Notes under the pieces: generated by a model
The model's database searches: none
What the model saw: only the letters and a program-made list of their open reading frames with translations
Told to the model about the DNA's origin: nothing
Program-made: the position numbers and the translations under genes
DNA from: Schmidtea nova
Lineage: Eukaryota
DNA: 64,000 nt
Direction: 5' to 3'
NCBI GenBank assembly: GCA_044892505.1
Contig: CM097883.1
Coordinates: forward strand, 216,690,001-216,754,000
In this document: in pieces, positions 11,994 to 20,860 of the stretch
Layout of the letters: each line of letters starts with the position of its first letter
Numbering within the stretch: position 1 is the stretch's first letter

Positions 11994-13498
11994 AGTAGGT
12001 AGTTAACGGCCCTTAAACTCACTTAAATTCTACCCACCCCCCACCCCCCTAGAAAATTTTTTTTTCTGAGTTTACGGGCCATTATGTTTTTGGGTCGATC
12101 TTTTTTATTGGAAAATTTTTGTCGGTCTCTTGTACAGGTGCGTTTACGGGCCACTATGTTTTTTCTGGCCATTTTTGTATTGGAAATTTATTGTCGGTCT
12201 CTTGTACAGGTGCGTTGACGGGCCACTATGTTTTTCTGGTCATTATTGTATTGGAAATTTATTGTCGGTCTTTTGTACAGGTGCGTTAGCGGGCCATTAT
12301 GTTTTTGGGTCGATCTTTTGTATTGGAAAACTTTTCTCGGTCTTTTGTACAGGGATTTTTAGCTCCGAGATTTTTCTCGGGCAAAAAGGGACTCTAGTAA
12401 TGTGAGAGTTGAAATGACATAATATTTAAAATTTAATAAAAAAAAGGGTAAAATTAATTTTTTGGAGAAATCAGAATTGGTGAATTTTTAAATATAAAAT
12501 GAAATTCTTTTTTCACAAAATTCTTTTTTAAACCAATAAAAGTCTTATCTAATAAAAAGAAAAATTTTTAACTAATAAAAAGAAACATTTTTAACTAATA
12601 ACAATTCAAATAAATAAAAAAAAACATTTTTAACTAAATTTTATTAAAATAAATACAAATTTTATTAAAATAAATCTTCTTCATCGTCTTCTTCTGTAAC
12701 TTGATTGAATTCTCTGTCATTAGTGTCTTTATAATGCCCGTATGCACAACTTTCATTTTTTCCCACCCAAACCCTTTTATCATCATTATTAGTTAGTGCA
12801 ATTTTTGAATTTTTAAAGCTATATAACTGATGATTTTTTGTACCTATTCTAAATTGTGGTACACTAATCTCTGAGTTATTTAAATAACATTTTACATATG
12901 AATCGTGGTCTATTTTAATATCCTTTAATGTTGCTCCCTTAGCTTTTGTAGTATTAGTTTTACCCAACAAGCTGTAACATTTCGGTCTAAGGAAAATCCA
13001 CTCATCATATCCTTCACCCTTACTTTCATCTTTGAATTTCCCAATAACAGAATCCAATTTCTTGCTGTATAGTGGGTGATCAGTTGGATAATTTGATGTA
13101 TCTAACAAGTTATCATTTTTCATTTCATTTAATAATATTTCTAATTTTAGATTTTTAATTTCTAGAAAAAACGAATCTGTATCGCCTGCTACGATATTTA
13201 TCTGACAACTATATTTGTCGCGATATTTTTGTAAATCTTTGTATTGTAATTCGTACATTCGAAGTTTTGATAAATCAAGCACCGATTGTCCAATATAACT
13301 CGGTCTATCTAAACAAATCGAATCTGGATTTAATAAAGCAGCAACTAAATTATCGTCGATTTTAATAGATTTTTGAAAGAAGGTTTTGATGTATATTTAA
13401 CTAGTTTTTTCTCCGTTGAACATAATCTTAAATTCATTCTCCTTTTAAGATTTTCCACTGTTTTGCCATACAGACTATTATTGAGTAATTTGAAAAAG
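11994..13498 (+). repeat. Left terminal inverted repeat (1,505 bp)
   Basis: Mirrors 19356-20860 position for position (coordinate sum 32854); only two mismatches noticed (12460/20394, 13186/19668). Confidence 0.95.
12071..12355. repeat. Subterminal tandem repeat, 4 x ~72 bp (mirrored at ~20499-20783)
   Basis: Units start at 12071, 12143, 12215, 12286 (..CGGGCCA.TATG...ATTGGAAA...TCGGTCT.TTGTACAGG). Confidence 0.9.
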
Positions 13499-16400
13499 TT
13501 TTTATCTAAAGTATTAGTACTTTTCGCCCGCAATTCAGTGTTGGTGTCTATATACTTTTTGAAAATTGGAGATTGTTTAAATTTAACTGCTCTATTTATC
13601 TTTGTGACTTTAACACCAAGTCCTAAATATAATTGAAGTAATCGCCAATGAATTATATAATTATTTTTAGGGTAATGAGTCAATAGTAATTTTTCTACTT
13701 TTGAACCTCGTGGTTTCATTTTTTCTGCAGCTACCGGGAAATCATCCAAGAAATCATGAATTTCAGCAGGTATTTCCAAATCTACCTCTAAAGTGTAACC
13801 GTAAGATATAGATTCAAGATTTAGATTAATACAGTCATGCAAAATATTATCTAAATTATCAGTCACCCAACTAAATTCTCCACAAGGTAAAGGTTGACTT
13901 AAAGCCCATCCGTAAAGATTATTTATATCGATATACAATAATTCTGTATTTTCATCGGTTTTAACGAAGTGTTTATTTACAAAAGTCAAACCTCCTCGAA
14001 TTCCCCCTTCATAAAAGCTAAACATTTCATTTTCTGTTATTAATTCTATTGGTTCATCTAAAGTCATTAAAGAAGATGACCAAGACATGCCAGGAATACC
14101 GAAGTAATTCAATGGCTCTAATCTATTGTGAGCTATAGATTTGGTTCGAAATTGCTGAATGAAATCAGCCAAAAGAAAGCAATCAAGTTTCAAGTAAGTC
14201 ATCATATAATCTAAAAGAGTAACACAGTTTGTTTCTGTCCAAATCAGTTGTGCCTTTTCATATTCTTCTTTTGAAACACCGTTCCAGATTGGTGGTAACT
14301 CATAAGTATTTTCAAGTACTTCTAAACTTGTAGCAAAGCTATACGGAAAAATACCCTTTTCAGAAACTATAGTTCCATTAAAAACCGAATTTGTCAAAGG
14401 TAAAGATTTCAACGTTTTCACTGCCTTTGCCAAAGAATCATTCACAAACTGGTATGAGTCTATAAATCTTAAACTAATCTTGCCAACATGAGCTATCAAT
14501 GAAATAAATTTTTCAGTTGTAATAGGTATACAACCCAATGACCAATTCTTGAATTTATTTAATCCGTGTTTAAGAATATGGTGCATATCATATCCTTTCA
14601 AGTTATGAAAAACTATTGGTAAAGACTTGTTGATTTTTCTATTAATGTTACACGTTTGACATGCTGCACCTAAATATTTCCCAGTGAAATGGTCGTGGTC
14701 TCTTACAGGATCTACGATATTTTTCATGCAAAGGTAACAAGTGGTACCATTTTTAAATTGATCCTCTTCAATTTCAGTCAATCTATTCATTGGTTTGTTT
14801 CCATTTTTATTGTAATATGGAAGAACTTTTAATAAAGCAATATCTTCAATCGCTTTTAAAAATTCATCTACACAATTTAGTCCAATAAATTGTTGGTAAG
14901 ACTTTGTCCCCTCAAAGTTATTTATTAACAAAAGACCCGCAGAAATAGGCAAGTGTTTCTCATAATATACATCATCCTTTGGTAAAATTGATTCAAAGTC
15001 TGCATAAATAACGAATGGTGGGGTAACAGTTTTTGACCAATCTGTAAATTTTAGCATTTTATTTTCCGGGAAAGTGTATAATGTTGTTCCTAGTTGATTT
15101 TTTCTGCATAAAATCTCATGTTTTTCAAACGATAATTTATTTGGGAAACCATTTAAACATCTACTGCACCATTCGCTTCTTATCTTAGTAGTACAATAAA
15201 TGCTTTGGTGACAATTCATTAAACGTTTTAAATTTATAATAGGTACATAATGATATTTTTCCCCTTCATTTAATAACAATAAATTTATAGTTTTTCCTTC
15301 TGTTACTTTGGACCGATGAATAATATCCAAATGAGGATGCTTTAAAATATAATCATCTTGCTCTTCATAAATTTCATTATTATAACATAGTACATTTATG
15401 ATCAATCCTGGATTCTTTGCCTCGAATTTTTTGATACTATTTAATTTCATGGGCATGTCTGATATATCATATTTGAGCTCTGACAAAACATTTATATATT
15501 TTGATACTCTTTCTCTATCTCTAGATATTAAATCATATTTTAATATAGCTAAAATGCTATATAAAAAACATAAATTATCCTTATTATCAATGTTTAATAT
15601 ACATCTCTTTCCTTTTAATCCTTCAAGAGTTTTTACAATGCTTCTACCTGCTAACCTACTTATATTGGATATCTTAGTTACAACAAAACTTATTTCAGTA
15701 ATACGATTAAGTACCCAACTGCTACCTAATTCCGCAAATGAAGTTATCTTTTCATTCAATTTTTTAATTCCCTCTTCGAAAAATGTCTGTGTCAGAGGTT
15801 TTGCACTATTGGAAATATTGTTTCTTTTAATTTCTCCATCTTTCTCAAATTCAACACAGATACCAAATTGTATCTTCACATAGCCTAGTTCGTTAATTAT
15901 TTCAATTAATTTATTAATTAATGATTGTGGAAGAATAATTTGCTTTATATTTAAATCACTAGTGTTAATTTTTAAAATCCTATGCGATCCATTTAAATCA
16001 CTTTCAATGACAGGGAGAGGTTCTATAACACTTCCTCCAGTTTGATAAAATCCAACGTTCCAAAAACCTTCAATCTCTTCCACCGCTTCAATTAAAATCT
16101 TGTTTTCATCTGCTTCATCCGCTTCCATCGCTTCTAATAAAATCTTGTCTTTAATCTCTTCTTGTAAATTTTGTGATTTCTTGATTATATCTATGTTCAA
16201 TTTAATCTTTTTATTATTTATTGGGTTTTGAGTCAAGTTTGGTCTTTTAAATAATTTTATTTTCTTAGACCTATATTCATTTAAATGATCCTTATGTTCA
16301 TCGTAAAAATTTTTATATGTAAAGGGTTGGGAAGTTTGGCATACGGGACATATATAATAGCGAATTTTATAATAAGAGTGTCCATAATATTGCTCCATTG

Positions 16401-19355: not shown

Positions 19356-20189
19356 CTTTTTCAAATTACTCAATAATAGTCTGTATGGCAAAACAGTGGA
19401 AAATCTTAAAAGGAGAATGAATTTAAGATTATGTTCAACGGAGAAAAAACTAGTTAAATATACATCAAAACCTTCTTTCAAAAATCTATTAAAATCGACG
19501 ATAATTTAGTTGCTGCTTTATTAAATCCAGATTCGATTTGTTTAGATAGACCGAGTTATATTGGACAATCGGTGCTTGATTTATCAAAACTTCGAATGTA
19601 CGAATTACAATACAAAGATTTACAAAAATATCGCGACAAATATAGTTGTCAGATAAATATCGTAGCATGCGATACAGATTCGTTTTTTCTAGAAATTAAA
19701 AATCTAAAATTAGAAATATTATTAAATGAAATGAAAAATGATAACTTGTTAGATACATCAAATTATCCAACTGATCACCCACTATACAGCAAGAAATTGG
19801 ATTCTGTTATTGGGAAATTCAAAGATGAAAGTAAGGGTGAAGGATATGATGAGTGGATTTTCCTTAGACCGAAATGTTACAGCTTGTTGGGTAAAACTAA
19901 TACTACAAAAGCTAAGGGAGCAACATTAAAGGATATTAAAATAGACCACGATTCATATGTAAAATGTTATTTAAATAACTCAGAGATTAGTGTACCACAA
20001 TTTAGAATAGGTACAAAAAATCATCAGTTATATAGCTTTAAAAATTCAAAAATTGCACTAACTAATAATGATGATAAAAGGGTTTGGGTGGGAAAAAATG
20101 AAAGTTGTGCATACGGGCATTATAAAGACACTAATGACAGAGAATTCAATCAAGTTACAGAAGAAGACGATGAAGAAGATTTATTTTAA
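19356..20189 (+). pseudogene. Duplicated 3' fragment of pPolB (motif B to stop) inside the right TIR
   Basis: ORF 19572-20189 equals ORF 12665-13282 except AGDTDS>ACDTDS; same A5 frameshift at 19480-19484; no 5' part. Confidence 0.92.
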
Positions 20190-20860
20190 TAAAATTTGTA
20201 TTTATTTTAATAAAATTTAGTTAAAAATGTTTTTTTTTATTTATTTGAATTGTTATTAGTTAAAAATGTTTCTTTTTATTAGTTAAAAATTTTTCTTTTT
20301 ATTAGATAAGACTTTTATTGGTTTAAAAAAGAATTTTGTGAAAAAAGAATTTCATTTTATATTTAAAAATTCACCAATTCTGATTTCTCCAAATAATTAA
20401 TTTTACCCTTTTTTTTATTAAATTTTAAATATTATGTCATTTCAACTCTCACATTACTAGAGTCCCTTTTTGCCCGAGAAAAATCTCGGAGCTAAAAATC
20501 CCTGTACAAAAGACCGAGAAAAGTTTTCCAATACAAAAGATCGACCCAAAAACATAATGGCCCGCTAACGCACCTGTACAAAAGACCGACAATAAATTTC
20601 CAATACAATAATGACCAGAAAAACATAGTGGCCCGTCAACGCACCTGTACAAGAGACCGACAATAAATTTCCAATACAAAAATGGCCAGAAAAAACATAG
20701 TGGCCCGTAAACGCACCTGTACAAGAGACCGACAAAAATTTTCCAATAAAAAAGATCGACCCAAAAACATAATGGCCCGTAAACTCAGAAAAAAAAATTT
20801 TCTAGGGGGGTGGGGGGTGGGTAGAATTTAAGTGAGTTTAAGGGCCGTTAACTACCTACT
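19356..20860 (-). repeat. Right terminal inverted repeat (1,505 bp)
   Basis: Reverse complement of 11994-13498. Confidence 0.95.

What the first reader, a model, noticed from the sequence alone, without database searches (positions are those of the whole stretch)
11994..20860. Polymerase-only Polinton with 1.5-kb TIRs that swallow the 3' end of pPolB (copy-back-like genome)
Seen: AG...CT termini, a perfect 6-bp TSD and 1,505-bp TIRs with only two noticed mismatches. The inner TIR boundary falls inside pPolB just before motif B, so motif B to stop is present twice. No integrase, ATPase, protease or capsid gene fits in the 8.9 kb. Known: autonomous Polintons are ~15-20 kb, encode integrase plus pPolB and usually virion genes, and make 6-bp TSDs. 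Inference: the right-hand gene block was replaced by a fold-back copy of the left end during strand-displacement replication, like a copy-back defective viral genome. The product was still integrated cleanly by an integrase in trans, and recently. If multi-copy, this is a self-replicating but integration-dependent satellite class.
Basis: partly seen in the sequence, partly recalled or inferred. Interest (0 to 1): 0.85.

Follow-up and report, generated by a model that had tools for sequence, protein, structure and literature searches.

The report
Polymerase-only defective Polinton, gene-swallowing inverted ends
An 8.9-kb remnant of a virus-like Polinton/adintovirus element sits in an invertebrate genome, keeping only its (frameshifted) DNA polymerase gene between 1.5-kb inverted ends that duplicate the gene's tail; it is a real and tidy but single defective copy, not shown to be a new self-replicating class.

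Summary
The arms 11994-13498 and 19356-20860 are 1,505 nt long with 2 mismatches and no indels. The termini are AG...CT, and the 6-bp duplication TACCAT abuts both ends. The inner arm boundary lies in the polymerase gene just before motif B.

The gene (12665-16398, minus strand) is a full-length protein-primed family-B polymerase. Its best fold match is phi29 polymerase. Its closest relatives (55-60% identity) lie on metagenome contigs that also carry an rve integrase, an A32-type ATPase and a C48 protease, which is the Polinton/adintovirus gene set.

Nothing else in the element codes. The remaining 2.96 kb is AT-rich DNA with a 144-bp x 12 tandem array.

- The polymerase carries one frameshift, present in both arms, so "self-replicating" is not supported as the sequence stands.
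- In relatives the 3' end of polB faces an internal gene block, not a terminus, so more than one rearrangement is needed.
- Copy-back during replication before integration and repair of a break after insertion (inverted-repeat expansion) predict the same structure. One copy cannot separate them.
- No second copy was found in the window or in the protein collections.
- Gene-containing ~2-kb Polinton TIRs are already reported in butterflies.

Interest is modest.

The parts
11988..11993 (.). Left copy of the 6-bp target-site duplication (TACCAT)
11994..13498 (.). Left terminal inverted repeat, 1,505 nt. The outer ~670 nt are non-coding. The inner ~835 nt are the 3' part of polB.
12070..12353 (.). 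Subterminal 72-bp x 4 tandem array inside the left arm (mirror copy at 20501-20784)
12665..16398 (-). [quoted passage not shown] It is broken by one frameshift and has no other stop.
14644..14754 (-). Endonuclease VII / HNH-like zinc-finger insert within polB (residues 549-585)
   Evidence: present in 18 of 19 family members scanned; weak match to Hpy99I
16399..17327 (.). AT-rich non-coding spacer upstream of polB. It holds no protease gene, unlike the relatives.
17328..19066 (.). Tandem array, 144-bp unit x about 12, not found elsewhere in the window
19067..19355 (.). Unique non-coding stretch up to the inner junction with the right arm
19356..20860 (.). Right terminal inverted repeat, 1,505 nt
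19356..20189 (+). Detached inverted duplicate of the 3' part of polB (motif B to stop). It has the same frame structure as the left arm and differs from it by one residue.
20861..20866 (.). Right copy of the 6-bp target-site duplication (TACCAT)

Best explanation
This is a young, defective, non-autonomous derivative of a Polinton/adintovirus-type element of an invertebrate animal.

Shown:
- It was inserted by an rve-type integration that used two intact AG...CT termini and made a 6-bp duplication.
- It keeps only the protein-primed polymerase gene.
- Its inverted ends were lengthened from a few hundred bases to 1.5 kb. The polB-proximal end (terminal non-coding region plus the last ~835 nt of polB) was copied in inverted orientation onto the other side, and whatever lay there was lost.

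Inferred:
- The lengthening came from DNA synthesis that switched to, or folded back on, the complementary strand of the other end.
- I think it most likely that this happened on a free linear replicating form. A truncated molecule regains a second terminus only in this way, and only molecules with two termini can be integrated. Integrase, and probably also polymerase, would then have been supplied by a complete relative in the same cell.
- As it stands the element cannot replicate or integrate on its own.
For: Structure and ends.

Polymerase identity:
- The two reading frames, searched apart, together cover residues 1-1226 of the 1,242-residue relative P0001, at 55% and 65% identity.
- Exonuclease motifs and polymerase motifs A, B and C are visible in the translations.
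- The AlphaFold model (pLDDT 73) matches phi29 DNA polymerase over about 558 of 570 columns, E = 4e-9.
- Relatives carry PF03175.

Relatives are Polinton/adintovirus-like. Their contigs carry rve integrase with a chromo domain, Pox_A32 ATPase, Peptidase_C48, Bcl-2 and TBP genes. Bcl2 homologues and genes upstream of PolB are noted for adintoviruses in PMC8502044.

Youth: 2 differences in 1,505 nt between the arms, and no stop in about 1,220 codons apart from the one frameshift.

The host is an animal. A mitochondrial IF-2 exon at 51447-53192 is 42-45% identical to insect, mollusc, nemertean and tick proteins.

Precedent:
- Mobile butterfly polintons have ~2-kb TIRs that contain hexon and adenain genes, and polB-less derivatives are still mobilised (bioRxiv 10.1101/2025.02.07.637071).
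- Long inverted duplications of one genome end in defective genomes of protein-primed replicons. This rests on my own knowledge of Daniell 1976, which I saw only as a reference in PMC12090768.
Against: - Only one copy is seen.
- No parental or helper element is in hand.
- There is no microhomology or other mark at the inner junction.
- Break repair after insertion gives the same product.
- In relatives the 3' end of polB is internal and a protease gene lies upstream, so the history has more than one step.
- The frameshift is shared by both arms. The polymerase part was therefore already broken when it was duplicated, or the arms were later homogenised, or the shift is a recurrent assembly error.
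Confidence: 0.45

Rival explanations
1. Rearrangement after insertion. A longer element with short inverted ends was integrated here. Later a chromosomal double-strand break inside it was repaired. The broken end carrying the right arm invaded the left arm, which is homologous but inverted. It copied inward about 835 nt into polB and was then joined to the other broken end. This deleted the genes in between. It is the same process that expands inverted repeats in plastid genomes.
For: - It gives exactly the observed structure, with both original termini and the duplication intact.
- It needs no helper and no second copy, which fits the single copy seen.
- A frameshift that arose in the chromosome and was then duplicated with the arm is the natural order of events under this reading.
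Against: - It needs at least two large rearrangements in an element so young that its 3.7-kb gene has no stop codon.
- Gene-containing long TIRs in butterflies belong to mobile, multi-copy polintons. This shows that such growth of the ends occurs in propagating lineages.
Confidence: 0.35
2. Assembly artefact. The inverted right arm is a fold-back or chimeric join made by the assembler or the library, or a collapse of two oppositely oriented copies.
For: - Long inverted duplications are a known artefact class of long-read libraries (my own knowledge).
- No read data are available here.
- The shared frameshift could be a recurrent homopolymer-type error.
Against: - Both ends join unique host DNA at the exact terminal base, with a perfect 6-bp duplication.
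- The arms differ at 2 positions, so they were not simply copied from one consensus.
- No N run lies in or beside the arms.
Confidence: 0.08
3. This is one member of a multi-copy class of polymerase-carrying mini-elements that replicate themselves and depend on a helper only for integration.
For: The polymerase gene is full length with all catalytic motifs. The termini and the duplication are intact.
Against: - There is one frameshift in the only gene, in both arms.
- No second copy was found in the window or in the protein collections.
- The ~5.7-kb contigs of relatives, which looked like candidates for small polymerase-only genomes, are fragments that also carry a protease and other genes.
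Confidence: 0.1

Closest known systems
Polintons / Mavericks (polintoviruses) and adintoviruses of animals
   Same: - Protein-primed family-B polymerase whose nearest relatives lie on contigs with rve integrase, A32-type ATPase, C48 protease and Bcl-2.
- Terminal inverted repeats within the published 100-1,500 bp range and a duplication within the 5-8 bp range (PMC10748475).
- AG...CT termini (my own knowledge of Kapitonov and Jurka 2006).
   Different: - 8.9 kb instead of 13-25 kb.
- No integrase, capsid, ATPase or protease genes.
- Polintons by definition encode both the polymerase and the integrase (PMC5499653), so this is a derivative and not a member in the strict sense.
Butterfly polintons with ~2-kb gene-containing TIRs, and polB-less mobilised derivatives (bioRxiv 10.1101/2025.02.07.637071)
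   Same: The inverted ends have swallowed coding sequence, so that it is present twice per insertion. Defective derivatives exist that must rely on functions supplied in trans.
   Different: - There, whole hexon and adenain genes lie in the ends of otherwise complete, multi-copy elements. Here only part of polB does, in a single copy stripped of all other genes.
- The defective forms reported there lack polB. This one keeps only polB.
Defective genomes of protein-primed linear replicons with a long inverted duplication of one end (adenovirus incomplete particles, Daniell 1976; copy-back class of defective viral genomes, PMC13506859)
   Same: Architecture: one terminus with its adjoining unique sequence is repeated in inverted orientation at the other end, and the rest of the genome is lost.
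   Different: - Those are free molecules observed in infected cells with a known parent. This is a chromosomal insertion with no parent in hand.
- The adenovirus comparison rests on my own knowledge. The 1976 paper could not be read.
Mitochondrial linear plasmids of fungi and plants (kalilo type)
   Same: About 8-9 kb, inverted ends over 1 kb long that overlap coding sequence, and a protein-primed polymerase (my own knowledge).
   Different: - They also encode an RNA polymerase.
- They do not insert with AG...CT ends and a 6-bp duplication.
- The polymerase here groups with adintovirus-like contigs and animal-genome copies, not with plasmids.
Inverted-repeat expansion by break repair (plastid genomes)
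   Same: The boundary of a large inverted repeat moves into a neighbouring gene, so that part of the gene is duplicated (my own knowledge). This is the model for the post-insertion rival.
   Different: An organelle genome, not a mobile element. No deletion of the whole remaining gene set.

Membership tests
Polinton/Maverick (autonomous) | [quoted passage not shown] | tested here: met
   Relatives carry PF03175. The fold matches phi29 polymerase at E = 4e-9. Motifs are visible. The gene has one frameshift.
Polinton/Maverick (autonomous) | Encodes a retrovirus-like (rve) integrase | tested here: not met
   No frame longer than 72 codons in the 2.96 kb outside polB, and no Pfam hit. The definition is from PMC5499653.
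Polinton/Maverick (autonomous) | Terminal inverted repeats of 100-1,500 bp and a 5-8 bp (typically 6-bp) target-site duplication | tested here: met
   1,505-nt arms and the 6-bp TACCAT duplication. The ranges are from PMC10748475.
Polinton/Maverick (autonomous) | Virion module (major and minor capsid proteins, packaging ATPase, maturation protease) and a size of 13-25 kb | tested here: not met
   8,867 bp, with no such frames. They are present on relatives' contigs.
Polinton/Maverick (autonomous) | Several copies at different sites in the genome | not testable with these tools
   There is no other copy in the 64-kb window. The host genome is not in the collections.
Copy-back type defective genome of a protein-primed replicon | One end plus adjoining unique sequence repeated in inverted orientation at the other end, with loss of the remaining genes | tested here: met
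Copy-back type defective genome of a protein-primed replicon | Formed during replication of a free genome, that is before integration | not testable with these tools
   This needs further copies with the same junction at other sites, or alleles at this site. The junction itself carries no mark.
Copy-back type defective genome of a protein-primed replicon | A known parental genome from which it is derived | not tested
   The nearest relatives are only 55-60% identical in polB.
Mitochondrial linear plasmids (kalilo type) | Polymerase plus a phage-type RNA polymerase gene between long inverted ends | tested here: not met
   There is no second gene. The flanks are nuclear-type host DNA with a target duplication.

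The most novel reading that the evidence does not exclude
The structure was made before integration and is one member of a propagating lineage of mini-elements. These keep the polymerase gene and replication ends of a Polinton/adintovirus and borrow integrase (and perhaps capsids) from a complete relative. They would be a defective-interfering-like satellite fixed in an animal germ line, and the first genomic record of copy-back genomes of a protein-primed eukaryotic virus.
Probability: 0.12. Interest if true: 0.7.

Novelty: new variant of a known kind. Interest (0 to 1): 0.35.

Why it matters
If the long arms arose on a free replicating form, this insertion would be a chromosomal snapshot of a defective genome of a Polinton/adintovirus. 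It would be indirect sequence evidence that these elements replicate as linear protein-primed molecules in an animal germ line, and that their integrase acts in trans on any molecule with two good ends.

If it arose after insertion, it is simply one more way a dead element decays. Either way it is a clean example of inverted ends growing into a gene. With one copy, a frameshifted gene and published precedent for gene-containing Polinton ends, a specialist would be only mildly surprised.

Tried and rejected
1. Other copies in the window. blastn of the element against the whole window gave no hit outside the element.
2. A paralogous empty site. The flanks contain dispersed host repeats (10873-11105 resembles 27518-27752; 11415-11775 resembles 63561-63915), but none spans the insertion point.
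3. The same protein elsewhere. Exact look-ups found nothing. The best homologue is 60% identical.
4. Small polymerase-only genomes among relatives. Recurrent contigs of about 5.7 kb looked promising, but their gene tables show a protease and other genes cut by contig ends, and longer contigs of the same proteins carry more genes. They are fragments.
5. A relic of an older right arm inside the element. A sensitive self-blast found none, and the 144-bp array is unrelated to the 72-bp subterminal array.
6. An intron in place of a frameshift. Rejected, because relatives read through as single frames of about 1,240 residues and no tool predicts an intron.
7. RNA genes. No tRNA and no Rfam family in the window.
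8. Direct sequence match to solved structures. None with the single protein. With the family profile, only a marginal phi29 match (E = 0.16) and an HNH-type match. The fold search was needed.
9. Origin of the relatives' samples. The accession strings are in no held paper.
10. Host species. Not identified beyond an invertebrate-like animal.
11. The bacterial promoter scan upstream of polB is at chance level and not relevant to a eukaryote.
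Full report
OBSERVATION. The repeat finder reports arms 11994-13498 and 19356-20860, each 1,505 nt, with 5,857 nt between them. My own count gives 2 mismatches and no indels. Complementarity ends abruptly outside and inside the arms. The element begins AG and ends CT. The hexamer TACCAT lies directly outside both termini, at 11988-11993 and 20861-20866. 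At this base composition a fixed 6-bp match has a chance of about 1 in 1,000. No N run lies inside the element. The inner boundary of the left arm falls a few codons before the motif B stretch of the polymerase gene. The right arm therefore holds a detached inverted copy of motif B to the stop codon.

THE GENE. [quoted passage not shown]
- It reads in two frames, which means one frameshift. There is no other stop.
- I searched the two pieces apart. Together they cover residues 1-1226 of the 1,242-residue relative P0001, at 55% and 65% identity. The gene is therefore full length.
- The exonuclease motifs and polymerase motifs A, B and C can be read in the translations.
- Pfam sees only an Endonuclease VII / HNH-like zinc finger at residues 549-585 of the window protein. 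Of 19 family members scanned, 18 have that insert and 5 reach PF03175.
- A model built on that alignment (mean pLDDT 73) matches phi29 DNA polymerase over nearly its whole length: E = 4e-9, about 558 of 570 columns.
- The frameshift lies in the part of the gene that is inside the arm. The arms differ by substitutions only, so both arms carry it.

THE REST OF THE ELEMENT.
- Between the start of polB and the right arm lie 2,957 nt with no frame above 72 codons.
- This stretch is made of a 930-nt AT-rich spacer, a 144-bp unit repeated about 12 times (17328-19066) and a 290-nt unique stretch.
- The arms carry a 72-bp x 4 subterminal array, which is unrelated to the 144-bp array.
- The first nine bases hold a short direct reiteration (GTAG twice). 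Protein-primed replicons use reiterations of this kind when they slide back at initiation. That link is an inference from general knowledge.
- There are no tRNA or Rfam matches.

RELATIVES AND HOST.
- The best homologues (55-60% identity, about 1,190-1,290 residues) come from ENA metagenome assemblies. More distant ones (about 33%) are in beetle and Caenorhabditis genomes.
- The gene tables of three look-ups show polB preceded on the same strand by a Peptidase_C48 gene. It is followed by a convergent block that includes an rve integrase (with a faint chromo hit) and a Pox_A32-type ATPase, with Bcl-2 and TBP genes beyond.
- This is the Polinton/adintovirus layout. The adintovirus paper notes genes upstream of PolB and Bcl2 homologues (PMC8502044).
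- The window is animal DNA. The frame at 51447-53192 is a mitochondrial IF-2 exon, 42-45% identical to proteins of insects, molluscs, a nemertean and ticks. One unnamed protein is 80% identical.
- The host species is not in the collections.

WHAT IT IS. It is a young, defective derivative of such an element. It was integrated with two proper termini and a 6-bp duplication, it is stripped of everything but polB, and its inverted ends have grown into polB. Polintons by definition encode both the polymerase and the integrase (PMC5499653). This element therefore fails a defining feature and is a non-autonomous derivative, not a member in the strict sense.

HOW IT AROSE. Two readings give the same product.
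- (a) On a free linear replicating form, a truncated strand folds back or switches to the complementary strand of the intact end and copies it. It thereby regains a second terminus. Only such molecules can then be integrated by an integrase supplied in trans.
- (b) After insertion of a longer element, a chromosomal break is repaired. The end bearing the right arm invades the inverted left arm, copies about 835 nt into polB and is joined to the other broken end.
- Nothing at the junction separates them, since there is no microhomology beyond the boundary.
- I lean to (a), at 0.45 against 0.35. In relatives the 3' end of polB is internal and a protease gene lies upstream. The history therefore has at least two large rearrangements in an element so young that its 3.7-kb gene has no stop codon and its arms differ at 0.13%. 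Quick serial rearrangement without point decay is typical of defective genomes in a replicating pool.
- This argument is weak, because a parent at 55% distance may have had another gene order.
- The frameshift shared by both arms fits (b) most simply. Under (a) it implies polymerase supplied in trans, later homogenisation of the arms, or a recurrent assembly error.

WHAT IS NOT SUPPORTED. 'Self-replicating' is not supported, because the only gene is frameshifted. 'Satellite class' is not supported either. No second copy exists in the window. No near-identical protein exists in the searched collections. The ~5.7-kb contigs of relatives that might have been small polymerase-only genomes are fragments with further genes.

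COMPARISON WITH WHAT IS KNOWN.
- Published Polinton ranges are 13-25 kb, 100-1,500 bp arms and 5-8 bp duplications (PMC10748475).
- A 2026 preprint describes butterfly polintons whose ~2-kb arms contain hexon and adenain genes, giving two copies per insertion. It also describes polB-less derivatives that stayed mobile (10.1101/2025.02.07.637071). Arms that swallow coding sequence, and defective derivatives served in trans, are therefore known.
- The reverse case, with only polB kept and part of it in the arms, I did not find in the literature searches.
- Copy-back architecture is defined in PMC13506859.
- The adenovirus precedent (Daniell 1976) is from my own knowledge and appears only in a reference list. 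The paper is not held.

VERDICT. The feature is real and the anatomy was read correctly. The mechanism is plausible but unproven. The strongest claims (self-replication, a class) are unsupported. I rate it a new variant of a known kind, with interest 0.35.

SLIPS AND LIMITS, STATED AS REQUIRED.
1. Searches fetched ten metagenome contigs (L001-L010) by look-up of homologous proteins. They turned out to be Polinton/adintovirus-like and probably come from animals. After I already suspected this. I still made two more look-ups, to test whether the 5.7-kb contigs were polymerase-only genomes. If these count as viruses of animals, that was against the bar on fetching. I then stopped, used only the printed gene tables, and did not read, align or save their DNA.
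2. An earlier count gave the bounds of the two reading frames of polB, which brackets the frameshift. In my reasoning I also looked at where the frame changes. Neither is repeated here.

Noticed in passing
window 14644-14754 (-), residues 549-585 of polB: An Endonuclease VII / HNH-like zinc finger is inserted in the exonuclease half of the polymerase. It is present in 18 of 19 family members scanned, including beetle and Caenorhabditis copies. There is a weak profile match to restriction endonuclease Hpy99I. Its role is unknown.
   Followed up: partly
window 15037-16398 (-), about the first 450 residues of polB: A long N-terminal region precedes the exonuclease motifs. It has a C2H2-like start, a disordered acidic stretch and a confidently folded alpha/beta domain at about residues 125-400 (pLDDT 80-90). 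No Pfam match. It could be the terminal-protein or priming part, but this was not tested.
   Followed up: no
window 17328-19066: A 144-bp x ~12 tandem array (with a 288-bp higher-order period) lies inside the element and is absent from the rest of the window. Whether it belongs to the element family or was captured is unknown.
   Followed up: partly
window 392-1849 (-) and 2323-5433 (-): Two long frames (485 and 1,036 codons) lie in a region of higher G+C (34%) and strong AT skew. The longer one has a retroviral-type aspartyl protease domain and ankyrin repeats. The shorter one has no Pfam hit. They could be a host gene or another mobile element.
   Followed up: partly
window 36148-36555 (-): A frame with a Pif1 helicase 2B domain (E = 1e-16). 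It is probably a Helitron-type or Pif1 fragment.
   Followed up: no
window 45076-45795 (+) and 57153-57656 (-): Two frames with GIY-YIG nuclease domains. Each lies beside a masked N run. They are possibly Penelope-like element remnants.
   Followed up: no
window 7627-8109 (-) and 35072-35614 (-): Two frames with C3HC4 RING fingers.
   Followed up: no
window 51447-53192 (+) and 28906-29481 (+): Host exons. One is mitochondrial translation initiation factor IF-2, with an unnamed best hit at 80% and named animals at 42-45%. The other is a class-II glutamine amidotransferase domain. The host appears to belong to a poorly sampled invertebrate lineage.
   Followed up: partly
window 10873-11105 / 27518-27752 and 11415-11775 / 63561-63915: Dispersed host repeats (80% and 71% identity) lie in the left flank of the element. 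3-bp-period simple repeats lie near 9341-9414, 34344-34417 and 45963-46049.
   Followed up: no
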